Shown here: positions 351-36,999 of the stretch, piece by piece
Position numbering within the stretch: the stretch's first letter is position 1
How the letters are laid out: every line of letters begins with the position of its first letter
Source: Macrostomum lignano
Taxonomy: Eukaryota
DNA length: 64,000 nt
Assembly (NCBI GenBank): GCA_002269645.1
Contig: NIVC01000527.1
Span: forward strand, 310,001-374,000
Direction of reading: 5' to 3'
The notes under the pieces: generated by a model
Seen by the model: the letters and a program-made list of their open reading frames with translations, nothing else
Told to the model about the DNA's origin: nothing
The model's database searches: none
Position numbers and translations under genes: made by a program

Positions 351-1852
351 GTAGCCAAGCACAAGACCAGTGCCTACTTCGGCGCAGCTAAAGTTAATGT
401 GGCCGAGTGCTGCAGCCTGCTGCTGCGGCTGCTGCGACGTCGCGAAGCCGCCAACCCAACCGACGGCGACGCCAATCTGCCGTTCATCAAGTTTAAGTAC
501 GGCGGCTTTGACGGACTGTTTCGGGAACACCGAGAGAGTTTTAGTCCGCTGCTGGCAGGTGTCACCTGCACCGATTTCCGAATTTTTGTCGAAACGAAAG
601 TGAGTGGCTATTCTAAGATGCTTTTCATATATCGACTACGTTACATAGATCATTTGGCTTCATTTTTCATTTATCACCAGAAATTGGGGGGGGGGCGAGA
701 GTTTAGGAAGTGGCACTTCTGAGTCGCCTGTGCACCCGAAATCTGCTACTGGTCTAGTCTATTCCCATCATACCTGAAACTGTTAAATTCAGTAAAATAA
801 CAAATATGTTTTATCTTCTTCAATTCGCCATCTTCCTTTTAAAGCACTACTGGCGGGCGAGGACCCGCAACTTGTGGCGGACCGGCTTTATCATACGCCA
901 CAGGTGGCGCGGAATTTTTACCAGGTCCACACGGACTGGTACTGGCAGGCCGGTAGCGCTGTTCTGCAGCAAATAGTGAAGGAGAGCGCCGGAAGGGTAA
1001 GCTCTGCTGAGAATTTCTTTTTGCCCTAAGCTGTCTTTTATGCTGCATGCTTCCTAATAGATAATTCCTTATTTATTTTCTAAGTCTAGTTAAACAAACG
1101 AGAATTAATGAAAGCAGAAAAATTTTCTTTGAAAAAATTAGGCCACACGTCAGCCGATTCAGTCCCGGCCATCGACGCAGCATTCGCGGCACGCCATCAC
1201 CGCCGCGTCCGAGCGCAGCGCCACCAACGCCGCCGCGTCGGAGTGCAGCGCCACCGCCCCCGCTTCAAACCGCAGCGCCGCCCGCGCGTCGAAGCGCAGC
1301 GCCACCACCGCCGCCGCGTCGGAGCGCAGCGCCACCACCGCCGCCGCGTCCGAGCGCAGCGCCACCAACGCCGCCGCGTCGGAGTGCAGCGCCACCGCCC
1401 CCGCTTCAAACCGCAGCGCAGCCCGCGCGTCGAAGCGCAGCGCCACCACCGCCGCCGCGTCGGAGCGCAGCGCCACCAACGCCGCCGCGTCCGAGCGCAG
1501 CGCCACCGCCCCCGCGTCGGAGCGCAGCGGCACCACTGCACCAAGCAATCACAACACCTGGCAGCCAAGTGTCATGGTGCTTGCCTTTTGGCCTGGCGAT
1601 GGTGAGCAGTGGTGGCCTGCAATTGTCTGCTTGCCGCCAAGAGGCAAATTAGCTACACGTGGCAACCGCGTCCATGTGCAGTTTTTGGACGAGCCCCCAA
1701 GCCGGGATTGGGTCGACAACGTGCGGCCCGCGGCAAACCATGGCATTGGCTTCTAGGCTAAAAGCCAGGACTTCATCCTTTGCATGAAGAAGCTGAAGCT
1801 GGCTTTAAAAATGTCGAGATTGGAGCGCCTCGAGCACTTTTTGAAAGTTTAA
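351..1852 (+). pseudogene. Spliced tyrosine-recombinase (Crypton-like) C-terminal half fused to an MSH6/NSD-type PWWP domain; 5' exons lie left of the window; one in-frame TAG
   Basis: Exon 351-599/603 (ttcag|GTAGCC) encodes VAKHKT...G and GVTCTDFRIFVETK. Exon 845-996 (aaag|...AGG|gtaag) encodes VADRLYHTPQVARNFY, with the H-x8-Y spacing of YR box II. Exon 1142-1852 (ttag|GCC, phase 0 matching the previous donor) encodes a repeat linker then VLAFWPGDGEQWWPAIV...VHVQFLDEPPSRDWV...GF*AKSQDFILCMKKLKLALKMSRLERLE. TAG at 1754-1756, final TAA at 1850-1852. Confidence 0.72.
1199..1530 (+). repeat. 30-bp coding tandem repeat (~AAASERSATT) forming the recombinase-PWWP linker
   Basis: gccgccgcgtcggagcgcagcgccaccacc-type units, open in the PWWP frame. 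Confidence 0.85.
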
Positions 1853-2115: not shown

Positions 2116-3119
2116 GTCCAGCCAGCCTCTCATCCATTTAAGGCCATTTTGTCCAGCCAGCCTCTCAGCCATTTAAGGTCATTTTGTCACTATTACCCTG
2201 TCACTCACTCTACTAGTCTTTCACTCTGCGAGTCTGTCACTCACTCTACTAGTCTTTCACTCTGCGAATCTGTCACTCTATTAGCCAGTCACTTACTCTA
2301 CTAGTCTTTCACTCTCCAAATCTGTCAGTTTATTAGCCTGTCACTCACTCTACTAGCCTTTAACTCTGCGAATCTATCACTCTACCAGTCGGAAGTCAGC
2401 TTAAGACATGACTTTTAGACGATTTATGTAGTCTACGCATTGCTTTATAGCGAGTAACTATGGTCTAAAATCCCTCGCCATCTAATCTTCTGAGCCTACA
2501 TATGGCCGAAATAATTTTTTACACTTTGTCTTAGTACCATTCTATTTTTTCACTACCTTCTAAGGTCATTTTGTCCAGCCAGCCTCTCAGCCATTTAAGG
2601 TCATTTTGTCCAACCAGCCTCTCAGCCATTTAAGGTCATTTTGTCCGGCCAGCCTCTCAGCCATTTAAGGTCATTTTGTCCAGCCAGCCTCTCAGCCATT
2701 TAAGGTCATTTTGTCCAGCCAGCCTCTCAGCCATTTAAGGTCATTTTGTCCGGCCAGCCTCTCAGCCATTTAAGGTCATTTTGTCCGGCCAGCCTCTCAG
2801 CCATTTAAGGTCATTTTGTCCGGCCATCCTCTCAGCCATTTAAGGTCATTTTGTCCAGCCAGCCTCTCAGCCATTTAAGGTCATTTTGTCCAGCCAGCCT
2901 CTCAGCCATTTAAGGTCATTTTGTCCGGCCAGCCTCTCAGCCATTTAAGGTCATTTTGTCCAGCCAGCCTCTCAGCCATTTAAGGTCATTTTGTCCGCCC
3001 AGCCTCTCAGCCATTTAAGGTCATTTTATCTAGCCAGCCTCTCAGCCATTTAAGGTCATTTTGTCCGGCCAGCCTCTCAGCCATTTAAGGTCATTTTATC
3101 TAGCCAGCCTCTCAGCCAT
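2116..3119. repeat. 35-bp minisatellite (ccatttaaggtcattttgtccagccagcctctcag), main array 2554-3119, plus a second ~35-45 bp repeat at 2198-2385
   Basis: About 16 near-identical units in the main array; two stray units at 2116-2190. Confidence 0.92.
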
Positions 3120-3849
3120 TTCTCCAGGCTCCACAATCAGCTGTCTCCACTCTCTACTTTCTCCACTCTCTGCTGATACTCTTCCCTATCTCCTCTCCCT
3201 CCTATCTCCTGTCTCCTATTTCCATTCATATACGCCTCTTTTAACTGCCATCGCGGTTATCATTTACACATTCCACAAATGAGAATCACCGTCTTCATTA
3301 ATCATCTGCAACTGAATCAATCGTGCCATTTCTTCTGTGTGGCCGAAACTTCCAAAGCGAGTTGTTTTTCTATCTTCTATCTTCTATTATTGATATACTG
3401 TGTGAAAACTGACAATAATTGAGCTACTGTATATCGAGGCGCCACCTTCTGTATAGGCAATCAGATAGTAGCTCGTATGATAATGCTTTTTTCCTCGATC
3501 CCGCCAATCTCCATCCAATCTCCATCTCAATCCTCCATCCCGACTCTTACAATGCAGTCGAATCAATTGTTTCCAAATTCATGTTGGATGAAGGCCTGTC
3601 TAAAGTAAGCTCTGAAAAAAACTAGCCACTCAATACCTACTCAAAAACAGCTACTCAATATTTCTTGGGAAAGTAGCATGTGGAAATATCGTATTATAAT
3701 TAGGATAGGTTTGGTAAAATGTTCCAATTAAGCATTCTTCAAAATAAACATTGTGTCATATTGTCCGCTTCAGGTCAGCTTCATTCCCCACCTAAAAAGT
3801 CGTGTCATTTTGTCCGACCGTGTCATATTGTCCAGTTCGTGTCATTCAG

Positions 3850-4659
3850 TGCTCTTTGGGGACGGCACCCACACACAAAGGCCATGAAGTCGGCCTGGAC
3901 CCAGAACATCATGTGCACAGTGTGGTTCGATGCGCGAGGCGTGCTACTCGTCGACTACCTACCGCAGGGCCAGACAATCAATGCCGACTATGTGATTAAC
4001 CAGCTCGAGCAACTGCGTGCTGCCGTTCTATCCAAGCGCCGAATCATGCGTCAGAAGCCGTTCATCCTTTGGGACAACGCGCGTCCGCATGCCGCTGCTC
4101 GTACTCGCGCCAAGGTGGAAGAGCTGGGCTTTCGTCAGCTAAGTCACCCAGCCTACAGCCCCGACCTCGCGATTGCCGACTTCCATCTCTTCGGTCCAAT
4201 GAAGTTGCCAATGCGTGGGCAAGTTTTCACGACACGTCAGGAGGTCATTGACGCTGCTAACGCATCGCTGCACCAGCTGGACTCCAGCTTCTGGAAGGCT
4301 GGGTTTGACAATCTGATCGAACGCTATCAGAAGTGTATAGCATTTAACGGTGAATATGTGGAGCGCAACAGTGCTGGGCCAGACAGAAAGAACGACACCA
4401 GTGACAGTGATAGTGATTGGTAGGGATCAATGGCAGCTGGAACTTTGGTACAGTGATTTATGGTAAAGGGACACTGATTGATTGCAACGTGTTTTAAATT
4501 GTTGCTTTTTGTTCCGCTTGACACTAATAAAACATAATAATGTGTTCCTTTACTGTTTACTGTTTATCGTTTTAGAATATTATCCAGGAATTTCCCTTGT
4601 TATCATTGCGTTGAGAAATTGGCCTACAGGAAATCTGGAAACTTTTGCAACACCCCTCG
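3850..4659 (+). mobile_element. 5'-truncated mariner (DD34D) DNA transposon with intact transposase C-terminus and right TIR
   Basis: IMCTVWFD...WDNARPH...HPAYSPDLAIADFHLFGPMK...W..GF..L.ERYQKCIAFNGEYVE. Right end aaacttttgcaacacccctcg followed by TA at 4660-4661. The first catalytic D region and the left TIR are absent. Confidence 0.92.
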
Positions 4660-5694: not shown

Positions 5695-8600
5695 GATATG
5701 GTTTAGAGAAGAGATAGATTAAGTTATAAAGTTTTAAATTGTTATTGAGCAACATAGAGCTACAGCTATTAATATTAAAGTTATGGAAATGCTTATCCCC
5801 ACAGTCCTATGCTGATAATTCTAATTTTATCCACACAGATCCATGTTGATAATTTCTAGCTTATTCCCACGGCAGCTTATTGAAATAGTTGCTACCATTC
5901 AATCAAGTCTATACACCTTGTCAATAATTCCAATTTTATTCACACAGATCCATGTCAATAAAATATAATTTTATAGCTTATCTTACCCCCATGGCAGCTT
6001 ATTTGAATATTTGAATAGAGAACCTTAAAATGAATATTCAAAAACCATCTATTTGTTTTCACTGTTTTAGGCCTACAAATCTTCCAAATAAACTACTAAA
6101 TACTGAATAGTATCAAGCACTTTGTTAAAAAAGTTTCATTATTAAAAGGGTTAACCTACTAACAAATTGCTTCTTTGTATGTGCCATGTGGCACAAAAAT
6201 TTCTTTTTAGGCCTAGTTTTCTACTTAGAATTAGATGGCAGATGCTGGATAGTAGTTTGTTATGAAAGTTGCTGGCTCATTCCAGATAAGATGGACATAT
6301 TTGGAAAATAGAAAAGTCAATATTTTTGCTTACCATTGCCTTATCAGCCATTTTTTTGCCAAATGTTTTAAGTGTGTAATATATACAATCTAAGAATATA
6401 TTAATGGTAAAATGTTGGATTAGTATGTTATCAATTGGCAAAAAGTCATTTTAGGAAAAATTCGGAATTTTTCTAAGCAAAAAACATCATTAACTTTGTG
6501 TACCTTTTAAAAACAAATAGAAAGCTTTGGGAGGCTGAAACAAACAATAGATAAAATTATAGTACTTGCATAATCAGATAAAAACATTAGCGACCATATA
6601 ATGTATTATATTTTTAATATATTGATACCTCAAAGTTACTGAATTGACAGAAAAAAATATGTTACAACCATAATGCTATGACCATAAGGCTGCCTTTTCT
6701 TTTGTATCTTTGTTGCCTTTATGAGTTTATATATTCTAATAAAAGAATATGATTTCTGAAGATGTTCTTAGTCAAATTAAAAAAATGTATTGCAAAATAT
6801 CAAAAATGAAAAATGTTATAAGACTTTGAGAAAGGCCCCTCTCGTTTTTATTCAACTATTATCATGCATTTTAAAACCGCGCTAAAAACTATGAAACACT
6901 TTTTGTTAAAATGAATATATTTTTGATAATATTTCACGCGAATTAATTTTGTTATAAATCGTTGTAAAATTTAGTATAAATACAAGCGATTCAGACAAGA
7001 GGAGAGAGCAACTTGCTTGCAGTGTACAGTTCAAGAATTGAAGGTGCTAAGAAATAATCAGTGTTCCGACTAAATATATTTGCAGTGTTTTCCGAGTTAT
7101 TCATTTGAAGTAAGAGTGAAGTAGACGAGAGTATATACAGCATATATTACTGAGAAGCAGCAGTATTGAGTAGTAAGAGAATACGAAGTAGTTCCGAAGT
7201 AATAAGTGCAAGAATAACCGGAGGCTATGACCCTCTGATCTTGGAAACACCCAGGACTAGAAAAGTACATGCAATACATATACCAGTAAGCCAATAGACC
7301 ACTCAGGCCAGAATAATAATAAACACTACCAGAACAATATTAGACACTACCGGAATAACAGGAGAACGATAACAATTGTAAGGGCTGAATAATATTCTAA
7401 GAACAATATACTCAGATAAATACTCAGATAAATACTTAGACTAAATACTAAGATATATACTCAGATTAATTCTAAGAAACATTTCTCGGATTATTCTAAG
7501 ATTGATAAACTCATAATTTATTGATAGGATAATCCTGGTGGCAGCTACCAACTTAAAAGATTAGTTTAGCCCTTTGACAACTTTGATGGCAGCTAGTAAG
7601 GCTAAACAAAAGAACAAATAAGAGCCCTGGGACAGCTTTTGGTAACAACAGTGGGATATTATTAAGAAGGAAGAAACACCCCTGTTACAGCTTTGGTGTC
7701 AGCAATTGAGATTTTCATAGAGAGCAAAAAGGCCTGTTACAACTTTTATCTTTTAGTTTCTATGTGTCAAAAATCCTGTTGTTACGACCATAAGTGCCAT
7801 TCAAGGTTTAATAGCATCTATACTAATGATGATATCTATATGAAACTATATAAATATATTCTTGACAAAATAATCCTTTATTCAAAATATTGGTTTAGTA
7901 TATTCTATTATTAGATTTCATTTTATAAGTAAAAATAGCCTGTCATGTTACGACCATAATTATATGGAATGGCCCTGCTAATTAAATTTATAAAAAGTTG
8001 ACATTGGTTTTGTCAATATTTATTGAATGCCATTGATCCACTAATTATCACGCTTAATTTGTTATTTAGGCATTAATTTTAAAGACTAGCTTAGCTGCCA
8101 GCTTCACTTACTTAGAACAACCAAACAACCCTCTAAGATCGAGGCAAACAAGACTTGCAAAATTCAAATTTCAAAATGTAATAATAACAATAATAATAAT
8201 AATAATAATGACAATATCGATTTTGGATGGAGAGTTAGCAATATGCAAAAATGACACTGTCACACTGTGGTTTCGTTAGCAATATGTAAAAATGACACTG
8301 TCACACTGTGGTTTCAATGGAAAGTCACAAACATTGAAATAACAATTAGGCCTACTTACGTTTACATAAGTTACGTTTACATTTATACGTTACAATAAAA
8401 AGACTAATATGTCTATTAGTAAAAAGACTAGTAAGCAACATTTAACGTCAGTACACAAAACTAAACACAAACAACTGCACAACCTTAGCCGTGGGGATAA
8501 GATGGAAATTATCGACACGGATCCGTGTGGATAAAATTGGAATTATCGGCACGGGACCGTTGGGATAAGCAATTCCAAAAATTATAGCCACTGCGAAAAC

Positions 8601-9049: not shown

Positions 9050-12000
9050 ATGTCAAAACTATGGAACGAGAATTTGTGGGTGCGTACAATTAATGTTTCG
9101 TTTTTATTTCTTTATAAATCAAAATCAAGATCAATGATTTAAAATTGAGGCTTCCTTTGACTTCGTTTGTCTACTAAAAATATTACAAATTCCTTTTCTG
9201 GCTTTGCTCGACAACTCTAAAGGCAAGGCTAGAAGAGCAATATTGAGTAGTTAACAAGTTACAAGAAAATAGTAATTACATGAAAAGTTACTTTTTAATT
9301 TTAGTGGTGTTAAATTTTCGCTGTTACTTTTTACCATTACTCTTCCAAGCTAATAGATGTGAATAGTTTTAATTTATCCTCTTAATTGTTCCCATTTCAG
9401 GATACATTTAATCCTCACGTTTACAACTTCAACAAATTTAACTTCGAATTCTTAAAGACTTTCACTGAGTTTTTAAAGCGCCGCTGCAAGATAGAGGAAA
9501 CCTACTGCAAAGAGCTTCGGTAAGAATAAAACACGCTTGTCTATGAGTTAAAATAACGGTTTTTACTACTTGATGTGGCGATGATGTAACATGTATTCAA
9601 CCGATATTCCACCGTTGTCACTATTTATTATTTCCTCCCGCAAACGCTGATTGCAATATATAAATTTCAGAAAGCTTTGCTGCGATTGTCGTCCAAAGGA
9701 CTACAACTCCAACTCAAAGGAATATGCTAGGTAAGTGTTTGCTCCTTGCTTTGCAGAGTTTATAGGTGCTTGCCGTTGAGAGAACAAGGTGGCGCGGATG
9801 TTCTTTTGAGTTTGTCTGAGTTTAGGGATTGAGTATGAGAATACTGGGAATTAGATTCAAGAGCGCAATCCAAGGTAACCTAACAGGTTCTAATCCCCAC
9901 TGCAAGTCTAACACGTATGTATCAATCGTCAGGTTTTCAGTCCAGGCTGCCTTTGACTCAGCTCTAGGAGAGCTGATCTCCATGGCGGATCAGCGCAACG
10001 ATCTGCTGATTCAAAAGCTACGCGACACTCGGCACCAGCTACAGAAGGAGCTGACAGAGCTGCGCGATTCGGCCGCTAAAGCAGAGCGCCGCATCGCCGA
10101 GAAGAGCCGCGACCTCGAGACTAGCCGAAAAAAGGTGACGACCGCGCGCTCCCAGTACCATCGGGCGCATGCCGATCAGGCCAAAGCGACCACTCCTGAG
10201 GCGCAGGAGCAGCGACGGCAGCAGTGCGCTGCCAAACGCACAGTCTACGAAGGTACGAACACATTTAACTTGAACTTAATACATTTGACGATCTTCCAGC
10301 AGTCTGCGCTCCATCCCCGTTGGGAGGCTACATGGGGAGAAATATTTTTTAATAACCCACCTGTAGCTTTTGACCTTGCAGAGCCACTATTGGAAATACC
10401 ATTTAAGAAAAATGGTATTTAAAGCAGAAAAGCATTTTCCCTGAAAGCCAGCTACATGTATCTAGCCTAAGGTATCAGCATCTCCTTTGAGCTTTGGCTC
10501 AAAGCATTTGAGCAGCCCCCATAAGCCACAGCATTTCAGCAATCCCCTTTTGAGTCTTGACATGTCAGAAATCCCCCCAAAACCGCAACTTATTTATACA
10601 TTTGAAGATCCTCTGTTGAAAGCGCAGATGGCTTCCGAACGCATAAATAGAAATCTAATTGTTCCAAACACTCAAAACGATTTAAGCAATCATAGATTTT
10701 TTCTCGTAGTATCATTAATCAACCAAACATTTTAAAAGCATGCACGTTTCTAGAGCAATCCCTGTCAGCCCCTTTACATAGAACCGTCGACATGCGCGCT
10801 ATTGTATGAAGAGCAAGAGATTTAGAAAAACTTTTAAGAAATAAGTGTGCGACAGCTCAACCGGAATTCATTAATGAGATCCAAACAGTGAAACAAAAAC
10901 ACTAAGTAATTTTCCTAGCTATTTTGCTACAAAATGCTCAGTGCTAGTTTATCATTATCATACTTTATCATACGCTCGTAAAACCCAACACTTGCTTCAT
11001 TCGAGTATCAGACCATTCTTATATTTCTTTATATTAGAAGCAAGGGGCTGTGTGCACCATGGCGCACTTGAAGCGACATTGTTACACAACCGGCGAGAGG
11101 CATTACTGCCCCTTCCGACGACTCCCCTGTACGCAGTCATACGCACAGGCTCACACTCACACAGGATTGTACAGCGGCCCTAACTTTATTTATCGTTAGG
11201 CATTTGCACTTCACTGTGCCTTGGGGGTTGGATGTCAAGGGCGTTAATTGCACGAGCAGAGCCAAGCCGAGATTCCAATTTAGCCCCAAATCAATGTGAC
11301 CTGGTCTGGGCCGCTGGGCTACGGCCACCCAGTATAAGCCCCTCTTATTTATCCAGACTTTTAGTGTAGCTACATTAAGTCTTTTCTAATATTTATGCTT
11401 TTTTACACAGGAGCCCTCGGTGAATTCAACGAACTGCAGCGGCAGTACTACCACTCCGATCTACTCGAGCAGCTCAACCGATTGGAGATGCTCCAGCGCA
11501 ATTTTTGCACCGTCAGCCGCAACGCCATGGTGGATTGCGCCGATGCCGAGACCGCCACCCTGGCTGAGCAGACTCGCTCCGCCACCGGCATGTCGGCCTC
11601 GGTTAATCGCATCGATGCTGAGGCGGATGCTGCGACGTTTGTTCGCATCACAGCCAGCGACGAGCCCTTGCCAAACGACATGGTCCTGGAGGAACCGGCC
11701 ACTGCAGCCGCTGGGACTCTGACCCGGCCGGTTGTAACGGTGAGAGAAACCAACATCGTCTTTAAAGACCGATTGTTACATTTAGATATCCAACAATTTT
11801 TACTTATGCGTCTCTATTTTTTACTATTGCGCAGTATCGTACAGTACTGTCAGGTGTAGCCTCCAGACCAAACCAGCTACAACATTTCGGACCTGTCGAA
11901 TACAAATGCCGAGACATCCCATCTTTAGGCTCTCTGTCGGGGAATTCCTATGGCAGTTGACTGGTCCCAGCATTACTTTGGGCTCCATTCTTAGAGCTTT

Positions 12001-14057
12001 TCAGTCGTTTCTCCTTCGTTTAGACTCAAGCAAATGGCTTCCTAAGGCAACAAGTTAAATGTTACACGAACTGTCAGAAGCTGATTCTCTCTTATAGTTT
12101 TGATAACATGATTAAAACGTCACTCAGGATCGAATCGGTAGCAAAAATTCAGCTGCTCCAAATCTAGCGTACTTCTACTTTGCTATGCTAAATTCATGGG
12201 TATCTGTTATAGTAGCTTGCCCCAATCGATCCAATACATGCATTGAACCAATGTTACGCCAGGCCTCAAAGTCGCTGCCTGCTGCAGGAGCTTCCAACGC
12301 TGCTCCGACGGGAAACCCGACCGATGCTGGCGATTCCGTTGACGGAGCTGAGAAGCTGAAGAGGAAAATGTAACGCTACACTATTGCATTTTACTGTTGC
12401 GAGTGTATAATTTTTAATAAACTTCTGCTTCCATTAGTATACATTTTTCATTAATTTCTCCACAGAACCGGCCTAAAGACTCTTTTTGAGGCTTACAAAG
12501 CAAATCCAAGTCTTGGGGACGCTTCAGTTGTGGAATCCGAGCTGCGTCAGGCCATGAGCGCGTCTGACCAGATCGGTGGTACGCTTATTAATCGACGGCA
12601 GCCCTTCCGTGACGAATTCGAAACCAATGAATTTGATGTCGACGCTGTCTACAGCACCGTTGACGAAAACGAGGAAAATCCGGTTGTAATACGGAACGGT
12701 AAATTATGCTTGGTTGTTGCTCCAGATGCCACTGTTGGCTAAGGGTAGATGCACTGCTGATATTGATACCGGATGCACTGACGTTAATCCCAAATGTACT
12801 GCTGATGTTGATATTGGATGCACTGACGTTAATCCCAAATGCATTATTGATGCTGACCCCGGATGCACTGACGTTAATCCCAAATGTACTGCTGATGTTG
12901 ATACTGGATGCACTGACGTTAATCCCAAATGCATTATTGATGCTGACCCCGGATGCACTGACGTTAATCCCAAATGTACTGCTGATGTTGATACTGGATG
13001 CACTGACGTTAATCCCAAATGCATTATTGATGCTGACCCCGGATGCACTGACGTTAATCCCAAATGTACTGCTGATGTTGATACTGGATGCACTGACGTT
13101 AATCCCAAATGCATTATTGATGCTGACCCCGGATGCACTGACGTTAATCCCAAATGTACTGCTGATGTTGATACCGGATGCACTGACGTTAATCCCAAAT
13201 GCACTATTGATGCTGATCCCGGATGCACTGACGTTAATCCCAAATGTACTGCTGATGTTGATACTGGATGCACTGACGTTAATCCCAAATGCATTATTGA
13301 TGCTGACCCCGGATGCACTGACGTTAATCCCAAATGTACTGCTGATGTTGATACCGGATGCACTGACGTTAATCCCAAATGCACTATTGATGCTGATCCC
13401 GGATGCACTGACGTTAATCCCAAATGTACTGCTGATGTTGATACTGGATGCACTGACGTTAATCCCAAATGCATTATTGATGCTGATCCCGGATGCACTG
13501 ATATTAATCCCGTACGCAATGCAGATGTTGATCCTGGGTGCACTGAGCTAGATCCCGGATTACATGGCCTGATATAGCTTTAATATAGCCAACTATATTA
13601 AAGCTGTATCAGTTCGTTATGTGATTTAATCTCAAAATACATCGTAGTTTCTAATTGACAAAAAATTGCAGACGCGAATAAAGCTGCCATACATGTAAGC
13701 TATGAAGCTCATGCTGCTATGTCACCTCCTGAGACTCCTGCGAGACCACCTCTTCCGGCGCCTGATGAGAGCCCGGCGCCTGATGAGAACCCTGCACCTG
13801 CAACAGCTGATCCAGGACGTCCTATGTCCATTGCGCCAGCAGTAGATGAGCCACCGGAGCCGGCCTATGACACAATTGTCTCGCTGCTTTACGACTTCAA
13901 AGACGACACCCAGTCCAGCGTCCTGTCAGTGACAGCTGGCGAGCAGGTCCTACTGCTCAGATTGGACGATGAATGGTCTCTAGTGTCTCGACTGGACAAG
14001 TCCGAGTCTGGCTACGTGCCAACCGCTTATATCTCTTTGGAGACGCCTTCCGAATAG
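9050..14057 (+). CDS. F-BAR + HR1 + SH3 membrane adaptor (nostrin/CIP4-TOCA-like), 8 coding exons, 527 aa
   Basis: Exons 9050-9079, 9401-9519, 9671-9730, 9933-10252, 11411-11739, 12263-12369, 12466-12698, 13672-14057, all GT-AG and phase-consistent (1584 nt). F-BAR FLKRRCKIEETYCKEL; HR1 GLKTLFEAYKANPSLGD; C-terminal SH3 (LLYDF...LSVTAGEQV...W...GYVPTAYI). Confidence 0.9.
12750..13560. repeat. 45-bp intronic minisatellite with 90-bp dimeric period
   Basis: ggatgcactgacgttaatcccaaatg(tactgctgatgttgatact / cattattgatgctgacccc) alternate, about 18 units, within intron 12699-13671. Confidence 0.93.
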
Positions 14058-14920: not shown

Positions 14921-15150
14921 TTATATACCCTCGTAGATACTCAAGCATCGATTTATTACCGAGTTCGCTTTTTTAAAAATAAAATTTGCCTCCATTTTAA
15001 AAGCTTGCTGTAATTTATCAATCAGAAAATTGTCGAAATGCATTTGTTTCATTTGGCCGAGCATTGAAGTAGGGTGGTCAGCGAAAATGGTTCTCCTACC
15101 TACAATGTCCCTATCCACGTGTCCTGTAAGGCTGGACTTTGGCCTAATTA
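14921..15150 (-). mobile_element. Possible GIY-YIG endonuclease C-terminal relic (Penelope-like)
   Basis: Minus ORF ends HFDNFLI...MEANFIFKKANSVINR, resembling the EA-x-I...NR tail of PLE endonucleases. No clean GIY-YIG motif. Confidence 0.3.
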
Positions 15151-15254
15151 CAATCTTCAAAAAGGGCCAAAATCGTAGCGGACCCAAAGACTATGCGTGA
15201 AAAGTGGCCGCAAGTTTTCGCGACCTAAATGCTGTTTACCTTAGTTATTCATGC

Positions 15255-17240
15255 CTGCTCGGTATGCATGTGGCTTCTTTTATCAGAAACAGAATACAAG
15301 TCTCAACGGGTGACAGACTGCAACACGATGGCCCCGCTGTCCATCCGATCCGACCATCGCCTGCTTTTCTGCAACCTTCGCACCCGGGACCCGCTCTACA
15401 AGCCTCCCAAGCGACCCCCACGCCGCTACTACAGGGCACTGTGAGACTCCAGTACCCGCGGCAAGTTTGTCTCGGCGTTCGCCGCCGCACTGGGAGAGTC
15501 CGCGAGCACCGGCAACTATTCTGAAATAAGCGCGGCAGTGGCGACAGCCTCTAGCAAGACGCTGCCACTGATGCAACCTGCAGTCTGTAGTCTCCCGGTC
15601 TGGGCGAATGACAAAGGAGGTTCAGGAGGCGAGGCGGACAGTCGATAGGCTGCGACGGACCAGGCGACCGACGGCCGAGGCCGAGAAAGCCCTGACAGAC
15701 GCCTACACCAGGCGGCAGCAAGCCGCTGTTGACGATGCCATCCAAAGCGTCACCTCGGCGGGGCTCGACCAACGGAATCGGCTCGTCTGGCCCACAATCA
15801 ACGCCCCGACTGGCGCAAGAAGAAAACGGCGCTGAACTTGACCGGCGATACACCAGAGGCGCGCAGAAACGAACTGCGCGACTTCTTCGCTGATATTGTC
15901 AACTCGCCGCCACCGCCTCTGCCGGAAGCGATGCTATTGCCACTCGAGACAACGCTGCCGTCGCAGGAGGATTTCAGCACTCAGCCAGTGACCAGCAACG
16001 ACGTAGTGCAGTTCGCTCGCCAGGCGCCGGGAGTTTGCGCCCCCGGACTAGACGAGGTGCCTATCGAGGCGCTGCGAGTCATGAGGGTCGACACTGAGGT
16101 GGCCTGCGTGATGAACAATGTCCTCTCTGGAGGTGCCGCGCCCGCGAGAGGATAAACGCGCACATCGTTGCGATTACGAAGAAGCTAGGCACGATACGGA
16201 AGGAGGAGCACAGGGGGATCTCGCCGCGTCCTGCGCCGCGAAGCTGTTCAACCGCGTGCTGCCAGCTCGGTTGCAGCCTGTGCTGGACCAGTTTCTGCGC
16301 CCTGAGCAGAACGGGTTCCGCCCACATCGCAGTACAGTGACGCACATCCTGGCCCTCTGCCGCCATCATCGAAGAGGCGCGCATCCATCAGTCAAGTTTC
16401 GTGGTGATCTTCATTGACTCCCTCAAGGCTTTTGACTCGTTGGTTCGCGGCGCGCTGCCTCTCGTGCTTCACGCGTACAATGTACTGAAGCAACTGATTT
16501 CCACCGTCATGGCGATGTACCAGGACACGACCACTTCGGTGATGACGCCAGATGGACTGTCGGACCATTTCAGCACGTCGTGTGCTAGCATTGGATTGGG
16601 TGCTGAGGACCGGCCTGCCCGACCCGGATGACGGTTTCCAGCTGAGAAGACGCACGAGTCGGCGGCACCCGGAGAAGCGGCTCTCCGTTCCCGGCTACGC
16701 GGACGACCTCGCGCTGCTGTCATAGACGGCTGAAGGCGCCCAGTGGCTGCTGGATGGCCCGACGGCGGCAGCATCGCGAGTCGGCCTCATGCTGAACGCG
16801 CGGAAGACGGTGGTCTTCACGGTGACCTCCAACCTGCCTGCCGAGATCAACTGCCGAGACGCTGCCGGGGAGGCAATCATGCTTACCCGTTGCCAGCGGT
16901 TCCTGTACCTCGGCGGCCTCGTGCCGGACGTTGCCGACGACCTGGTGAGACGACGAGGACTGGCCTGGGCCGCGTTTCGTTCTGTGCGCTTCATACTTAA
17001 TTCTGAGGTCCTGGATGATGAGCTCAGGGCTCGGCTGTTTCAGGCAGTCGTTGAGACTGTCCTGTTGTAAAACGCCGAGACCTGGACCCTGACGGTTGCT
17101 TTGGAGAGGCAGCTGGACGCTACACATGCGGCCATGCTGCTTGCGGCGTTCGGAGTACGCAGCGGTCCAGGCAGCGAGACCAACGCCGCGCTCTACGCAA
17201 GGGCGCGCCTGATGCGGCCTCTGACCTGCCGCGCGGGTGA
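15255..17240 (+). mobile_element. Decayed non-LTR retrotransposon (RTE-like), endonuclease C-terminus plus reverse transcriptase
   Basis: SDHRLL endonuclease motif; APGLDEVPIEAL; LRPEQNGFRPHRST; FIDSLKAFDS; GYADDLALL at ~16693-16719; LNARKT; FLYLGG; RARLFQAVVETVLL*NAETWTL. Multiple frameshifts; the GVxQG segment appears deleted. Confidence 0.9.
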
Positions 17241-18322
17241 TGACTTCGACTTCGTATGGCACATACTTGTTGCGATGAGTGAGAGATCTTTTGTTTATGT
17301 ATTCCTTTGACCAGAATAGCTATAGTCTAAAGTATATACTGAGATCGCCAAGACCAGCGAGAGTATCGAGTTAGCTACATCTAAGGCGAAATCGCCTAAT
17401 TACTCGTTGGCGCAGCCTCCACTGACTGTACGTGTAGCTAAATGTACTGTAAGACATGCAAGGTCGTTTTGATGAAAAATGGAAAATTCAGTGAGTGGTC
17501 ATTTCCTGGATGGAAAACCCACAAAGAATTGCTATTTTATGTCTGAACTAAAATCTACAATTTTTTTAGATTTCCGTCGGAAGATATCTAGGAAAAATTG
17601 CAACGAACATGTGTTATTTTTGTATACGTAACTGTACGTTTTACTGTACAGTTTATTAAATGCGAATATCCGTGTGAGCTTTGTGCCTTTACAGTATTTT
17701 TTTAATTTTTATTGCAAATTGAATTACAAACCGGAACTGCAACTAGAATATTTCGATGATGAACTCTCACAACGATCTGCACAAAATTAGATTGGCACAT
17801 TTTAAGAGCAAATAAACAAAACAAACTTAAATCCTACTTACTAGTTTTTGCATTACCTTTTAAACATCTACTAGGTGTCAACGCTAAATGATTTTTGTAT
17901 CCAAGATGAAACTATGCTTGTTACCGAAACGAGATGTCACCACAGGGCCTAGTATTGTCACCGAAGTGAATTTTGCTTGTAACTGAAGTGACTGTCACCA
18001 AAACGACTGTGTATGTAATCCTTAACCCCTGTAAGAAACATGACCTATAATTGCGGAAGCGCCTTTAGGCCGTAAAGCAAATGAATCGATTCTCCCTAGG
18101 TTATTACTCGAGATTTAAGCCATAAACTCCAATGGGGGCGATAAAAATAGTACTCAGCTCATCGCAGTAAATTGCAGACGGTAGCTCGTATGTGCAACAG
18201 TTGTTTCAACATTCGAAATTAACATATAAATTATCTAGCTTACTTATCTAGCCAGTGTCGAGCACAGACGGTGTCATTGATTAGTTATTAATAATTAGCC
18301 AAGTCCAACGTGAAGTGTTCAG

Positions 18323-21272
18323 ATGAATAATCGATCGGAAGAGCAGACTGAGACATTATTGGACAAGTGCGGCGACCTTTTGATTTCCCAGAGCCAGCAG
18401 TTGCAGCAGATGTTGCAGCAACAGCGACAGTCGTCTGAAGCCGCCTCATCTGCAGCTGGTTTATCAAGAAAGCTTTGCTCGGCTCTGCTCATTTTGGAGC
18501 TGCACAGCAACTACAGTGGCCGATTGTTCGACCTACTCAAGTCTGAGCTGCTCACAGCGCTTAACCTTGAATTAAATACGCTTAGAAATATCGACGTATC
18601 TAGCCTGGATTACCGCGAGGCAACGAGACTGCTCAAGGACTTGTGCCTGCGCAGCAAGGCCATGTCGCACGACGTCATCAAGGGCAGTCGGGATCTTTTG
18701 AAGGCATTCAAAACTGTTCAGCGATCGGACAGACGACCACGCAGCAGCAGCGCCTTGAGCCGGGTGCGGGACCTGGCCATGGCCCCGAGTAAGTGTCGTT
18801 CAAACTCCCGGTCAGGCCGTCAAACGGCTACCGCTTCAAGTCGAGACGCAACGGGTACTAGCAAAGCCGACAGGCCTATGGCTCAGAAGCCAATGATGGT
18901 CAAATCATTTGCTCTGTTTGGTTTGAAAAAGAGCCTTACAGATCGTCTACCTAAGCAGCTGCCACCACTGCCTCCTGCTACCGCCTCTACCCCAGTGCCC
19001 GCTTCTTCAAGCCTGCCTGCGGCTCGGAAGCCAAAGGCATCCAAGTCAGTCACTCTGATCAATCTGGCGAGGAGTCACTCGTACCTTTCGCCAAAGTCGT
19101 CGAAACCGTCGCTGCCACCGCCTGTCGCAGACGCCTCAGATTCCAAGGGTCCAGTGCCTCCACGGCGAAGCAGTTCCCTAAACTCCATGCCACCCGATCT
19201 GCAGCTAATTCTACAGCGACACCGTCAGCTGCATCAGCCGCAGTTTCAGTCATCGCAGCGGAGATTGGCTGAGCCAAGAATTGGTCGCGAAACTGCCTGT
19301 TTTCCTTGCTTGAAAATCGCAACTACAATGGAGCAACAACGTACAGTTGGACCGACCATCTTGCAACAGCAGCAGAGCGAAGCGCATAAGCCAGGGTCAT
19401 TAAAGGCATCCGTGAGTACTGAAGGCACAACTCAGCTGCTGCCCAGCGAGACATCCGGCTCTCCGAATTTGGTTGGCGATTCGAAACGGATTCCGGACAA
19501 AGTTGAAACCATTTCCGACACGGCCACTAAAGTGTCTGAGCTGGATGGCGCCTGGAATGGCTTCTACAGCAGCACCAGCGCCAACTTATCCGAGTTGGAC
19601 TGCACCGAATCGGCTGCGGTGCGCAATCAGATAGCGCCGAGGTGAGTGGGAGTCTTGGGCTTGAGAATTCTAGCTACATCGATTTGCACTTTAAAATAAA
19701 CAGTGTACAAAATTTGTGACTCAATAATCTCAACTCATTATTGGTGATTCACTCCCGATGCAGTGTCTGTGATTCACTCTCGACCCAGTGTCTGTGATTC
19801 ACTCCCGATGCAGTGTCTGTGATTCATCCTCGACCCAGTGTCTGTGATTCACTCTCAGTGCAGTATCTGTGATTCACTCTCGATGCAGTGTCTGTGATTC
19901 ACTCTCAATGCAGTATCTGTGATTCACTCTCGATGCAGTGTCTGTGATTCACTCCCGATGCAGTGTCTGTGATTCACTCTCAATGCAGTATCTGTGATTC
20001 ACTCTCGATGCAGTGTCTGTGATTCACTCTCAATGCAGTATCTGTGATTCACTCTCGATGCAGTGTCTGTGATTCACTCTCAAGGCAGTATCTGTGATTC
20101 ACTCTCGATGCAGTGTCTGTGATTCACTCTCAATGCAGTATCTGTGATTCACTCTCGATGCAGTGTCTGTGATTCACTCTCAATGCAGTATCTGTGATTC
20201 ACTCTCGATGCAGTGTCTGTGATTCACTCTCAATGCAGTATCTGTGATTCACTCTCGATGCAGTGTCTGTGATTCACTCTTGATGCAGTGTCTGTGATTC
20301 ACTCTCAATGCAGTGTCTGTGATTCACTCTCAATGCAGTGTCTGTGATTCACTCTCGACCCAGTGTCTGTGATTCACTCTCAATGCAGTATCTGTGATTC
20401 ACTCTCGATGCAGTATCTGTGATTCACTCTCGATGCAGTGTCTGTGATTCACTCTCAATGCAGAGTCTGTTATTCACTCTCAATGCAGTGTCTGTGATTC
20501 ACTCTCAATGCAGTGTCTGTGATTCACTCTCAATGCAGTGTCTGTGATTCACTCTCGACCCAGTGTCTGTGATTCACTCTCAATGCAGAGTCTGTGATTC
20601 ACTCTTAACCCAGTCCGCTATTCGCTCAATTCTGCTCATTTTAACTCTCAATCAAGAGTGGTCATTCACTCTCAGTCTATATTCAAGGATCGATTATCCA
20701 TCCTTTGTCCGCGATTACATGTATTCAGTGTCAGTATCAATCCAGTGTTCAGAGATTCAGTGTCAATCTACGCATAGTTTGTGTTTTTGCTAGACGACAA
20801 AAATTTCTATTAAAGTGTATTGATTATCCCGTCCTCATGTTTTAGCTTACGTGTTTCCATGTCTTGCAGAAGCAGCCCACAGCAAGACGCGACCATAGTT
20901 GATTCTACAGCTGTCCCTGCAGAATCGAAAGCCTGCATTCAAAAGCTCCACCAACTCCAGAGGCTGCCAGCCGATGATGAAGCAGCTCAGAGCCAACCAG
21001 TTCCGGTCTTGGTAAGGCGTCAAAGGCGCCGCCGGCCTAGGCGAACTCATCCGTCTCTGATCAGCGGCGGTAAGCCAGCTGCAACTACGGCAGTTGCCAG
21101 CAGACCCAGAAAGTTTTCGGAGGCGCCACCGACAACAAGGAGAAGCGGCATCGGCAGCGGCTTCAGTGGCGACGACGAGTCAAGCAGGACGCAGTCGGCG
21201 AGTCAAAAGCGTCGGCCGTGCAGCGGCAACGTCAGATACTTGGCTAGCGACGTCTTGGAGACGGATATTTAG
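18323..21272 (+). CDS. Two-exon S/P/R/Q-rich protein of unknown function, 573 aa (upstream exon possible)
   Basis: Exon 18323-19641 (440-codon ORF, donor AG|gtgagt) spliced in phase 2 to 20870-21272 (ttgcag|A...TAG). ATG directly follows a ttcag acceptor. Confidence 0.7.
19744..20610. repeat. 25-bp intronic minisatellite (gcagtgtctgtgattcactctcaat)
   Basis: About 34 tandem units in intron 19642-20869. Confidence 0.93.
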
Positions 21273-33300: not shown

Positions 33301-36023
33301 TGGTGGATATTTATATATATATATAGAGAGAAAATAATGTTGTTCTAGAAATATGTTTGGGATTATAATAAAGATACAATATTATACTTGTAACATGTTT
33401 TGTAACTATAATGAGCAAACACATTTAATAATAATATGGCTAATAATTAAACTATAAAGTAAATAAAGTTAAAGCATAGAAATAGTTTGTTATGGAAATT
33501 TCTAGAGAAATGTAGAAACTTCTTTGACTTAATTTGGAAATTTTACTTTAGAATATATGAAAGGAAAGGAAACTTATAGAAGTTAGGGACATTGGAATAA
33601 TGCTAACTAGCAAGATGCTACAGTTGACTGCAACTTACCCAGTCAATATTTTTGCTAGTGGAAAGGACATCTATTTCTTCTTCTACAATGCCAACATAAA
33701 TGTTATTTATTTATTAGTGTTTTAAATATTAACTTTTGTCAAAGTTTAAATATCTTTTCATTATTTATCATAGTGGCCAAGTTGAAGCAAAGATTCATCT
33801 TCAGTGGGACCTAGAAAGCAAAAAGGTAAATTATGACTCCACAATTTTTTCTATCCTATTGAAGTGCATGCTTTACTTTGATGATTCTAAACTTGTCCCA
33901 ATAGTAAATATGCCTAATGGAGCTGATTAAAAAATAGAAAATAGTACTTATATAAAACTAATTCATGATTAAATATACAATTAATCAGTCACATATTAGC
34001 TGCAAACAAAACAATAATATTAATTAGGTATAAAAATGTTTTTGAGCACTTAGGTAACATTTGCTTTATGTTTAAACAAAAAGAGATATCTAGATCTTGC
34101 CACCTTAATGACATATGGGTAGTTAGGTTCAGAATTGAAATAGTATGCTATTTAAGTAATACAAATACAAAACAAAATTTGCAGTAATACAAAATTACTG
34201 CAAAAATACCTGATAGTTTAGATACTAATTTGGACTTCATTTTCTTGTTGCCATTGAGTAATTGATCAACTATGTAATGCATCAAACAAACAACTATCAT
34301 GCTGATCTTTAGCTGTAGCAATTAATGGCTTTACAACCTGAGAGATGTCATGTGTTAATAAAACTTTCTCTTAAAACTAGTAAATGTATAACAATATAAC
34401 AATATAATAATTTACTATAACAACTAAAGACAAGCATAACTTTTGGCAATACTTATGCAGCTGCCCTAAGTAGAAGTGAGTTGCAATCATAGTGCTAAAT
34501 AGGAAATTGATCATATTTCTCCTCTGTTGAACTATTGAAGTATTCAATATTGATATTTGATGACAACATGGTTTAGATAATTTTACATGCTTTGATCACT
34601 CCAATCTCTATGCATCTACCTTTCTTCTATTTCTTCATTATTGCTAATGATCATCATTGCCTTTATCATGTTCTATACCATGACCATTTGCCTCTATTTA
34701 CTTACTGTATAGATACTTAGTTGTCACATTGCCACTTAATGGCTATTCTCATATTATCAGTGGTACCCTTGTCATGGCTGGCTTTAGTGAAGCCCCTTTG
34801 CTAGCAATAGATACCAATTTGCCATAGACTTGCTTAAGAACTTTATGTAAGGCTAATAAAAATTGTCTAAAATAGGTTATATATATATAGCAATTGGTAT
34901 TGCTCTTTGCTATAGCTTAATAAAAGAAAAGCAAATGACATGTCTTACTAGTCTATATGCTATAGGTGACACTAATACCCTAGTGACTTGTCACCTGTTT
35001 GCAATCCAAAGTAGGTTGGTTATATCTCATTTGTACTTTTTCCATATACCTTGCTAAAGTCAATAAGTACCACTAGGGGATACATACTTAGCCAAAATTT
35101 ATCATGCAAAATTTGCATTCCATAAAGCAGATAATTGCTTCTGCCATTGATTTTTTGGGTTTATGATGGCAACTTGCAAAAAAGTTAGGTAGGGGTGATC
35201 AGTTTGTCATCTAGTTGGCTTCAAGTATTTTAAATGTTTGCTTGGCATGTCCAATAGGTTGTATATTTGAGTGCAGTGCAAAGCTCCTTGTGGCACAAGC
35301 TTTGCTTGGATATGTATTGCTTTTTCAGTTTGGTTGTTTGAAGTGATATGACAATATTTTTACTTTGTTATCAAATTAGCTTGTAATTCCCTATTCATGT
35401 TTTACAATATAAGATATAAGGTATTTTTATAACAAAACCAAAACTGTTAAAAGTGGTACACATTTCTAGACTAAGTTTAGGTAACAAATGTTTTTGAAAA
35501 TAAAGCTACTATTGATTTTTTCCATTGACAGGATTTTTGAAATGTAAGACAAATATATATAACATGATATTTATGAGTGAAAAATAGAAGAAAGTTAAGA
35601 AAAGCACAATTGATTTAAGCTTGTATATTGATATATTATAGTATTCTGTTTCACACCTTTGCCATACATCTCTGTTACAATTTGTTAAAATGGAACTTGC
35701 AATATCCATCTTGCTCTAGCACAAATCAACACAAACAACATCTAGTTAGAAAAGCAAAAAATCTGATGAGATTTTTACATGTGCCCTCTTGTAAGTTAAA
35801 GGCCACATGTAATTGCTATAGACTAAAACTGGATGGTCACTTCTGTGCATTTCTTTAGTGGAAGATCATCTAGCATGGATGAAGAAATAACCCTGATCAC
35901 AATAATGTACACAATAAGAAGGAAAAAGATGCTCTCAATCAGCCCTAATATGTCTATGGCTAAACTTTTCATTTAATTGCACAAAAAGATTTTCAGCCTT
36001 GGAACACAAGATTTAAGTGTCCA

Positions 36024-36872
36024 TTGCTGAGGGTGGCATTTAAGGGTCCTTTGCTGAGGGTGGCATTTAAGGGTCCTTTGCTGAGGGTGGCATTTAAGGG
36101 TCCTTTGCTGAGGGTGGCATTTAAGGGTCCTTTGCTGAGGGTGGCATTTAAGGGTCTTTTGCTGAGGGTGGCATTTAAGGGTCCTTTGCTGAGGGTGGCA
36201 TTTAAGGATCCTTTGCTGAGGGTGGCATTTAAGGGTCCTTTGCTGAGGGTGGCATTTAAGGGTCCTTTGCTGAGGGTGGCATTTAAGGGTCTTTTGCTGA
36301 GGGTGGCATTTAAGGGTCTTTTGCTGAGGGTGGCATTTAAGGGTCCTTTGCTGAGGGGTGGCATTTAAGGGTCCTTTGCTGAGGGTGGCATTTAAGGGTC
36401 CATGCCTGATGGTGGCATTTAAGGATCCATGGCTGAGGGTGGCATTTAAGGATCCATGGCTGAGGGTGGCATTTAAGGATGCATGGCTGAGGGTGGCATT
36501 TAAGGATCCATGGCTGATGGTGGCATTTAAGGATCCATGGCTGAGGGTGGCATTTAAGGATGCATGGCTAAGGGTGGCATTTAAGGATCCATGGCTGAGG
36601 GTGGCATTTAAGGATCCATGGCTAAGGGTGGCATTTAAGGATCCATGGCTGAGGGTGGCATTTAAGGATCCATGGCTGAGGGTGGCATTTAAGGATCCAT
36701 GGCTGAGGCTGGCATTTAAGGATCCATGCCTGAGGGTGGCATTTAAGGATCCATGGCTGATGGTGGCATTTAAGGATCCATGGCTAAGGGTGGCATTTAA
36801 GGATCCATGGCTGAGGCTGGCATTTAAGGATCCATGCCTGAGGGTGGCATTTAAGGATCCATGGCTGATGGT
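36024..36872. repeat. 27-bp minisatellite just upstream of CHAF1B
   Basis: gggtggcatttaagg(gtcctttg / atccatgg)ctga, about 31 units in two variant sub-arrays. Confidence 0.93.
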
Positions 36873-36999
36873 GGAATCACACTGCCATTTAGCATCCTCA
36901 GTCTGAATTCGAAATGCCGAAATTGAAGTTGATTTTTCACTGACACGCGCTATGACAAAATTAAAATCAATATCAATGCACGCGCCAAAGCTTGCAGCA

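What the first reader, a model, noticed from the sequence alone, without database searches (positions are those of the whole stretch)
351..1852. Tyrosine recombinase fused to an MSH6-type PWWP domain: candidate chromatin-guided integrase system
Seen: three GC-rich exons, missed as a unit by the ORF track, encode VxxHKT...G, TxTDFR (box-II HxxR with His replaced), LYH-x8-Y, a repeat linker, and a domain that aligns by eye to the human MSH6 PWWP as I recall it (VHVQFLDEPPSRDWV vs VHVQFFDDSPTRGWV; the C-terminal helix ALKMSRLERLE vs ALNKDKIKRLE ungapped). Known: YRs use R-K-H-R-H/W-Y catalysis; MSH6, NSD and LEDGF PWWPs read H3K36me2/3, and LEDGF steers lentiviral integration to gene bodies. Inference: a Crypton-like or larger YR element that carries its own chromatin reader for target selection, or a domesticated recombinase. 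I know of no described family with this architecture but cannot exclude one. One aromatic-cage position looks substituted (EQWWP vs YPWWP).
Basis: partly seen in the sequence, partly recalled or inferred. Interest (0 to 1): 0.88.

Follow-up and report, generated by a model that had tools for sequence, protein, structure and literature searches.

The report
Broken flatworm PWWP gene, recombinase unproven
The end of an unannotated flatworm gene, probably a decaying copy, really does encode an MSH6-like PWWP chromatin-binding domain, but that domain is cut by a stop codon and nothing beyond chance supports the upstream "tyrosine recombinase", so this is an ordinary orphan gene remnant rather than a chromatin-guided integrase.

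Summary
The window is Macrostomum lignano (Mlig_3_7 contig NIVC01000527.1, from base 310001).

Confirmed:
- Three GC-rich blocks with AG/GT borders and coding-type codon-position GC.
- A 30-bp x 12 tandem-repeat "linker".
- A PWWP-like stretch whose best solved relatives are MSH6 (E 3.8e-6), then NSD3 and NSD2. Pfam PWWP scores 24.3 bits, just under its 25.6 cut-off.

- The PWWP frame is interrupted once by an in-frame stop.
- The strongest donor of block 1 puts block 2 out of frame.

The tyrosine-recombinase reading has no support:
- No hit in Pfam, NCBIfam, PHROGs or PDB.
- No relative among 1.84 billion representative proteins.
- An unfiltered HMM of 82 real recombinases scores it -3.6 bits, and 74% of shuffles do as well.
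- The motif spacing recurs in 12% of shuffles.

Structure prediction was uninformative; it also failed on the PWWP control. The first catalytic Arg would lie outside the window, which I could not reach. No second copy or terminal repeats were seen.

Most likely this is the 3' end of a lineage-specific gene or pseudogene with a C-terminal PWWP. A very divergent recombinase fusion cannot be excluded (about 0.1). Interest is low.

The parts
351..1852 (+). 3' part of an unannotated multi-exon gene or pseudogene. It has three GC-rich coding blocks (351-c.600, c.845-996, 1142-1852) separated by AT-rich GT-AG spacers, and its 5' exons lie outside the window. Breaks counted: one in-frame stop codon (in the PWWP-coding stretch) and one possible frame mismatch at a block junction.
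   Evidence: Sequence and translations; codon-position GC; no protein with these exons in the databases; contiguous ORFs here are not on record as called genes.
1200..1536 (+). Tandem repeat of 30 bp x 12 with a 141-bp higher-order unit.
   Evidence: TRF and the repeat finder family D3. GC is 78%, and at least two of the three + frames stay open across it, so its openness says little about whether it is coding.
1574..1849 (+). MSH6/NSD-type PWWP domain homology: a beta-barrel with a QWWP motif and a C-terminal helix region. The reading frame is interrupted once.
   Evidence: PDB phmmer: MSH6 2gfu E 3.8e-6, 6oqm 6.7e-6, NSD3 4.7e-5, NSD2 about 0.02. Pfam PF00855 E 4.4e-5, 24.3 bits, profile positions 9-84 of 93. 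The similarity to MSH6 is present on both sides of the stop: 30.1 bits for the whole stretch against 27.7 bits for the part before it.
2561..3121 (.). Neighbour: 35-bp satellite x 16, with related copies at 2109-2188. It is not part of the gene.
3719..4423 (+). Neighbour: ORF holding the C-terminal part of a mariner-type transposase, from a separate element that is unrelated to the finding.
   Evidence: Pfam Transposase_1 E 4.5e-13 and DDE_3 E 4.7e-5. It is not on record as a called gene.

Best explanation
This is the 3' end of a lineage-restricted, unannotated Macrostomum lignano gene, most likely a decaying copy (pseudogene). Its last coding block carries a minisatellite-derived low-complexity linker and a C-terminal PWWP domain of the MSH6/NSD type. 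Shown: the exon-like blocks, the repeat, the PWWP homology, one in-frame stop in the PWWP stretch, and the absence of any detectable relative of the two upstream blocks. Inferred: if intact, the product would use the PWWP barrel as a chromatin or DNA-binding module. The known PWWP mechanism is a basic surface on nucleosomal DNA plus an aromatic cage for methyl-lysine. Here one of the three cage aromatics is Glu, so methyl-lysine reading would probably be weakened and DNA binding would dominate. In this copy the complete domain cannot be translated. The 135 residues encoded upstream are an orphan sequence of unknown fold, and their resemblance to a tyrosine-recombinase catalytic domain is within chance.
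For: Organism and position: the Ras ORF of the window is found at NIVC01000527.1:365380-366330, which places window base 1 at record base 310001. NIVC00000000 / GCA_002269645 is M. lignano Mlig_3_7. Coding character: AG/GT borders and codon-position GC like the neighbouring genes. PWWP. Breakage: one in-frame stop in the PWWP stretch, and the frame mismatch with the strongest donor. Similarity to MSH6 and NSD3 continues past the stop, as expected if the interruption is recent. Orphan status: 0 hits for block 1 among 1.84 billion representatives; 0 in the word-indexed searches; 0 in viral and metagenome contig scans. The M. lignano proteome is in that collection, so neither this gene nor a close paralogue is annotated there. 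No second copy in 64 kb. Recombinase reading at chance.
Against: The 5' exons are outside the window and could not be fetched, so the full domain architecture is unknown. A single stop and a splice-site ambiguity could be assembly errors, strain polymorphisms or alternative splicing in a long-read assembly of a polyploid genome (rival 2). No expression data were available. The spacings K..R..H..Y are close to those of XerD. My local test barely detects Cre (0.7 bits), so a very divergent eukaryotic recombinase would be missed.
Confidence: 0.5

Rival explanations
1. This is a highly divergent tyrosine recombinase, either a Crypton-like element or a domesticated DUF3504-like recombinase remnant, fused to a PWWP reader. 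If active it would tether recombination to PWWP-bound chromatin. If domesticated it would act as a DNA or chromatin-binding protein.
For: The candidate residues have spacings like XerD. K to xxxR is about 70 residues, R to H is 25, H to Y is 9, and G to H is 12 (XerD landmarks H244/R247/H270/Y279; candidate). Eukaryotic recombinases are known to be extremely divergent, and DUF3504 genes lose catalytic residues (PMC3212892). My local control barely sees Cre.
Against: No match in Pfam (which holds Phage_integrase and DUF3504), NCBIfam, PHROGs or PDB, even at E up to 10. The unfiltered HMM scores -3.6 bits and 74% of shuffles do as well; hhalign gives 0.9% probability over 11 columns. The spacing pattern occurs in 11.6% of shuffles. 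No relatives exist anywhere, and a transposon family would normally leave paralogues. No terminal or inverted repeats frame the locus and there is no second copy in the window.
Confidence: 0.1
2. This is an intact, functional host gene. The stop and the frame ambiguity would then be assembly errors, allele or homeologue-specific polymorphisms, or normal use of the weaker donor. Alternatively the protein naturally ends after the PWWP barrel.
For: The splice borders are clean and the codon-position GC is coding-like. An in-frame GT-AG model exists. PWWP similarity persists on both sides of the stop. The genome is neopolyploid and a second contig carries the same region's Ras gene (PMC10733133 listed), so another copy may be intact.
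Against: The stop requires a base substitution, which is the rarer error type in long-read assemblies (my own knowledge). No annotated protein or any database protein contains these exons, although the species' proteins are in the collection. The recent 95-98% identical tandem expansion inside the block suggests relaxed constraint.
Confidence: 0.2
3. These are two separate units rather than a fusion. Blocks 1-2 end one gene. The PWWP block would be its own transcript, possibly SL trans-spliced, translated from the first ATG after its acceptor. That ATG sits at the start of the PWWP barrel (1574) and is in its frame.
For: No ATG lies between the acceptor at 1140-1141 and 1574. The in-frame openness of the 78% GC repeat is weak evidence of coding, because at least two + frames are open across it. 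The linker's codon-position GC is not coding-like: 0.58, 0.83, 0.92.
Against: The donor after block 2 and the acceptor of block 3 are phase-compatible with the PWWP frame. No promoter or transcript evidence was available. A 5' leader of about 430 nt of GC-rich repeat would be unusual.
Confidence: 0.15

Closest known systems
MSH6 PWWP domain (PDB 2GFU, 6OQM)
   Same: It is the best solved relative (E 3.8e-6, 30.1 bits). Shared features are the xWWP motif, the RVHVQF-x-D-x-P-x-R-x-WV strand region and a similar C-terminal helix.
   Different: In MSH6 the domain is N-terminal to a MutS mismatch-repair core. Here it is at the C-terminus, and no MutS-like ORF of 150 aa or more was seen in the window. 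The Tyr before the motif is Glu, several loop residues are missing relative to MSH6, and the frame is interrupted once.
NSD3 / NSD2 PWWP1 (e.g. PDB 6G24, 5VC8)
   Same: These are the second-best relatives (E 4.7e-5 and about 0.02). Both the barrel and the C-terminal helix (ALKM..ER.E) align.
   Different: There are no SET, PHD or other NSD domains. The similarity is weaker than to MSH6.
Crypton tyrosine recombinases and their domesticated DUF3504 derivatives (KCTD1, KIAA1958, ZMYM2-4, QRICH1, WOC; Kojima & Jurka 2011, PMC3212892)
   Same: The concept matches: an animal gene with introns that encodes a recombinase-like domain lacking part of the R-H-R-Y tetrad, fused to other domains. The candidate spacings are compatible.
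   Different: There is no match to Pfam DUF3504 or Phage_integrase. No PWWP fusion is described in that paper (0 occurrences of PWWP). No paper in the library links a tyrosine recombinase to a PWWP fusion.
Chromatin-tethered integration (LEDGF/PSIP1 PWWP with lentiviral integrase; chromodomain integrases of chromoviruses)
   Same: The PSIP1 PWWP role is described in PMC3119473.
   Different: Those systems use DDE integrases, and for LEDGF a separate host protein. Here no integrase or recombinase could be demonstrated.

Membership tests
Tyrosine recombinase (Pfam Phage_integrase PF00589 / Crypton YR / DUF3504 PF12012) | Significant sequence-profile match to the catalytic domain | tested here: not met
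   0 families in Pfam for each block and for the GT-AG spliced 135 aa at E up to 10. 0 in NCBIfam and PHROGs. No recombinase in PDB. Local unfiltered HMM of 82 recombinases scores -3.6 bits and 74% of shuffles do as well; hhalign probability 0.9%.
Tyrosine recombinase (Pfam Phage_integrase PF00589 / Crypton YR / DUF3504 PF12012) | Catalytic residues R-K-H-R-H/W-Y in register | tested here: inconclusive
The first Arg would be encoded outside the window and is not testable. Candidates for K, the second R, H and Y exist with XerD-like spacing, and the box II His is absent.
Tyrosine recombinase (Pfam Phage_integrase PF00589 / Crypton YR / DUF3504 PF12012) | Recombinase catalytic fold | tested here: inconclusive
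   AF2 single-sequence model of block 1 has pLDDT 58, and the best Foldseek PDB hit has E 1.2 with no recombinase. The same procedure also failed to find PWWP structures for the PWWP stretch, so the negative result carries no weight.
Crypton-like mobile element | Multiple copies, and defined termini or short repeats around the recombinase gene | tested here: inconclusive
   No second copy in the 64 kb and no repeats framing the locus. No related protein exists anywhere, including the same species' proteome. However, the 5' side is outside the window and the rest of the genome could not be searched.
PWWP domain (Pfam PF00855, Royal family) | Sequence-profile match | tested here: met
   PDB phmmer: MSH6 E 3.8e-6, NSD3 4.7e-5. 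Pfam E 4.4e-5, but 24.3 bits is just under the gathering score of 25.6.
PWWP domain (Pfam PF00855, Royal family) | xWWP motif and three-residue aromatic cage | tested here: inconclusive
   The QWWP motif is present. By alignment to MSH6 and the cage rule of PMC3119473 (an aromatic three residues before the motif's last aromatic, that aromatic itself, and one in beta3), cage position 1 is Glu and position 2 is Trp, which is kept. Position 3 is Phe if the first of MSH6's two Phe is the cage residue; that assignment is from my own knowledge. So two of three positions are kept.
PWWP domain (Pfam PF00855, Royal family) | Uninterrupted coding sequence for barrel plus C-terminal helices | tested here: not met
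   There is one in-frame stop codon inside the PWWP-coding stretch.
MSH6 orthologue | PWWP followed by MutS domains I-V | tested here: not met
   The reading frame ends right after the PWWP and is followed by AT-rich DNA and satellites. No MutS domain was found among the window's ORFs that were scanned.

The most novel reading that the evidence does not exclude
Blocks 1-2 are the C-terminal half of an extremely divergent, flatworm-specific tyrosine recombinase, from a Crypton-like element or its domesticated descendant, that acquired an MSH6/NSD-type PWWP domain. This would be a recombinase with a built-in chromatin reader, seen here as a recently broken copy.
Probability: 0.08. Interest if true: 0.75.

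Novelty: new member of a known kind. Interest (0 to 1): 0.2.

Why it matters
A tyrosine recombinase carrying its own H3K36me-type reader would be a new way for a mobile element or a domesticated recombinase to choose chromatin targets. It would be comparable to LEDGF-guided lentiviral integration or to chromodomain integrases. The evidence here does not reach that. What is demonstrable is an orphan flatworm gene remnant with a broken MSH6-like PWWP domain, which is of modest interest for PWWP domain shuffling in Platyhelminthes and for annotation of the repeat-rich M. lignano genome. The case also shows that loose catalytic-residue spacing read by eye (12% of shuffles) is not evidence for a recombinase.

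Tried and rejected
- **Homologue searches.** The word-indexed search with block 1 and with the PWWP stretch (stop marked X) found nothing.
- **A wasted search.** I spent the third search on a neighbouring exon, hoping to walk upstream through an annotated protein. I set too strict an E-value and got nothing.
- **Exhaustive search.** phmmer with block 1 gave 0 hits.
- **Reaching the upstream exons or the homeologous copy.** I looked up contiguous ORFs of the window as called genes.
- **Viral and metagenome contig scans.** Block 1 and the PWWP gave no relatives.
- **Single-sequence AF2 plus Foldseek.** I ran this for block 1 and for the PWWP. Both models were poor and neither found its expected fold, so the results are uninformative.
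- **MSH6 fragment or recent MSH6 duplicate.** Rejected. There is no MutS part, the frame ends after the PWWP, and no database protein shares enough words with it.
- **Retrocopy.** Rejected because GT-AG spacers are present.
- **Minus-strand or other-frame coding.** Rejected. Only the stated frames are open through the blocks up to the one stop, with splice borders on the + strand.
- **Rfam.** No RNA family anywhere in the window.

Full report
**Where the window comes from.** A 316-aa Ras-type ORF of the window (55380-56330, minus strand) is on record at NIVC01000527.1:365380-366330 of assembly GCA_002269645.1. This places window base 1 at record base 310001. An identical copy lies on a second contig, NIVC01002896.1. 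Papers holding the accession NIVC00000000 / GCA_002269645 identify it as the Mlig_3_7 assembly of the neopolyploid flatworm Macrostomum lignano. The window also carries animal genes: a CAF1B/HIR1-type beta-propeller, a 7tm_1 receptor and an SH3 exon. It is very rich in 17-46 bp minisatellites.

**What is in the sequence.** Three GC-rich blocks on the + strand (351-c.600, c.845-996, 1142-1852) are bordered by AG and GT dinucleotides and separated by spacers of 30-39% GC. Blocks 1, 2 and the PWWP part show the coding pattern of GC by codon position (0.60/0.45/0.65, 0.73/0.41/0.69 and 0.56/0.42/0.64). The Ras and GPCR ORFs of the same window show the same pattern. An acceptor directly precedes base 351, so further 5' exons must lie outside the window.

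Block 3 starts with a 30-bp x 12 tandem repeat at 1200-1536, with a 141-bp higher-order unit at 95% identity. In the PWWP frame it reads as Ala/Ser/Arg/Thr-rich decapeptides.

- The PWWP-coding stretch is interrupted once by an in-frame stop codon.
- The consensus-like donor of block 1 would put block 2 out of frame. A continuous GT-AG model exists only with a weaker GT close by.

In total there is one certain break (a stop) and one possible break (a frame mismatch at a junction).

**The PWWP domain is real.**
- With the stop marked as X, phmmer against all PDB sequences gives the MSH6 PWWP as best match (2gfu E 3.8e-6, 30.1 bits; 6oqm E 6.7e-6). NSD3 (4.7e-5) and NSD2 (about 0.02) follow.
- Pfam PWWP matches profile positions 9-84 of 93 with E 4.4e-5. 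At 24.3 bits this is just below the gathering score of 25.6.
- The part before the stop alone scores 27.7 bits against MSH6. NSD3 also aligns to the C-terminal helix. The similarity therefore continues across the interruption, which suggests the interruption is recent.
- Structural work on human PWWP domains describes the cage as three aromatics: one three residues before the last aromatic of the motif, that aromatic, and one in beta3 (for example Y18/W21/F44 in HDGF2; PMC3119473).
- By that rule, and from the alignment, the first cage position here is Glu, the second is Trp (kept), and the beta3 Phe is kept if the first Phe of MSH6's pair is the cage residue. That last assignment is from my own knowledge.

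**The tyrosine-recombinase reading is not supported.**
- Database profiles. Pfam (which contains Phage_integrase and DUF3504), NCBIfam and PHROGs return no family at E up to 10. This holds for block 1, for block 2 and for the GT-AG spliced 135 residues. PDB sequences give only chance-level hits to unrelated enzymes.
- Homologues. The word-indexed search of 5.8 billion proteins finds nothing. An exhaustive phmmer of block 1 against 1.84 billion representatives finds no protein at E up to 0.001. Viral and metagenome contig scans are empty.
- Unfiltered local test. To remove HMMER's speed filters, I fetched XerD, lambda Int and Cre from annotated records and 80 diverse XerD relatives from IMG/VR. 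From these I built an HMM and scored the candidate with all filters off. It scores -3.6 bits, and 74% of 2000 shuffles score at least as well. hhalign gives 0.9% probability over 11 columns.
- Sensitivity of that test. A Xer-only model recognises the C-terminus of lambda Int (24.2 bits, 96% hhalign probability) but barely recognises Cre (0.7 bits, 4.7%). The test is therefore blind to very divergent recombinases.
- Spacing pattern. The pattern K-x(55-85)-R-x(18-32)-[HW]-x(7-10)-Y occurs in 11.6% of shuffles of the same 135 residues.
- Block-wise PSSMs. However, 6.7% of shuffles and 87 of 43,950 six-frame windows of this same 64 kb reach that score. The HxxR and Lys-hairpin blocks select other, non-significant sites.
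- Structure. Block 1 alone gave a model with pLDDT 58 and no significant Foldseek hit. The same procedure applied to the uninterrupted part of the PWWP also failed to find PWWP structures. The structural negative therefore has no weight either way.

**Mobile-element hallmarks.** None was seen. There is no second copy of any block in the window. No direct or inverted repeats frame the locus. There is no paralogue among database proteins, although the species' proteins are in the collection. The nearby mariner-type transposase ORF (3719-4423) and the 35-bp satellite (2561-3121) are unrelated neighbours.

**Is it even a fusion?**
- For a fusion: the donor after block 2 and the acceptor of block 3 are phase-compatible with the PWWP frame.
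- Against: the connecting 78% GC repeat is open in at least two + frames and has a non-coding-like codon-position profile.
- Against: the first ATG after the acceptor of block 3 is the Met at the start of the PWWP barrel, in frame. A separate, possibly trans-spliced, PWWP-only transcript therefore cannot be excluded.

**Conclusion.** The most likely reading (about 0.5) is the 3' end of a lineage-specific, unannotated flatworm gene with a C-terminal MSH6/NSD-type PWWP, present here as a broken and probably decaying copy. The upstream 135 residues are an orphan sequence.

The alternatives are:
- an intact gene whose defects are assembly or allele artefacts (0.2);
- two separate transcription units (0.15);
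- a very divergent recombinase-PWWP fusion (0.1 or less).

The literature held here describes Crypton-derived DUF3504 genes that have lost catalytic residues (PMC3212892). It describes no recombinase-PWWP fusion. The fusion would be new if real, but the present evidence does not support it.

One early notebook entry recorded an ORF end before I applied that rule, and it is not repeated here.

Noticed in passing
window 12749-13546, 19744-20605, 36011-36874, 38495-39007, 40424-40856, 42024-42731, 43195-46044, 46625-51521, 58951-59881, 60406-61927, 62857-63656: Roughly a quarter of the window is tandem minisatellite with 17-46 bp units. The largest arrays are 32 bp x 89 and 23 bp x 212. Several sit inside introns of genes and create long false ORFs in several frames.
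   Followed up: partly
window 52639-53718: A (GACT) x 270 microsatellite produces a 394-aa ORF on the minus strand. The ORF gives spurious Pfam hits (Gp5_C, DUF445, GerPC), which are an artefact and not a phage gene.
   Followed up: yes
window 36952-37449, 37860-38483, 39041-39799 (+): Three exons of a CAF1B/HIR1-type WD40 beta-propeller gene cover profile positions 1-143, 146-321 and 316-383. The introns are filled with 27-35 bp minisatellites.
   Followed up: partly
window 55380-56330 (-); L001, L002: A single-exon Ras/Roc-type GTPase ORF of 316 aa has an identical copy on a second contig (NIVC01002896.1). This fits the duplicated subgenomes of M. lignano, and it gave the window's genomic address.
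   Followed up: yes
window 5778-5873 and 8488-8583: 96-nt inverted repeats, 84% complementary, flank 2.6 kb of AT-rich DNA. Related 38-46 nt copies lie at 5815-5961 and 8497-8554. This is a candidate non-autonomous DNA transposon.
   Followed up: no
window 3719-4423 (+): An ORF holds the C-terminal part of a mariner-type transposase (Transposase_1, DDE_3). No N-terminal part is seen in frame, so it is probably a truncated copy. Breaks were not counted.
   Followed up: partly
window 15000-17300: A GC-rich block (56-62% GC) has overlapping ORFs on both strands and a weak reverse-transcriptase match (RVT_1 E 6.8e-4 at 16118-16417). It is probably a decayed non-LTR retrotransposon fragment.
   Followed up: partly
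window 9829-10422, 11395-11859, 13719-14057 (+): Coiled-coil ORFs followed by an SH3 exon (SH3_1 E 2.1e-5) lie on the same strand. They are probably exons of one gene interrupted by the 45/90-bp minisatellite at 12749-13546.
   Followed up: no
window 1142-1574: No ATG occurs between the acceptor of block 3 and the Met that opens the PWWP barrel. The block could therefore also serve as a PWWP-only, possibly trans-spliced, unit.
   Followed up: partly
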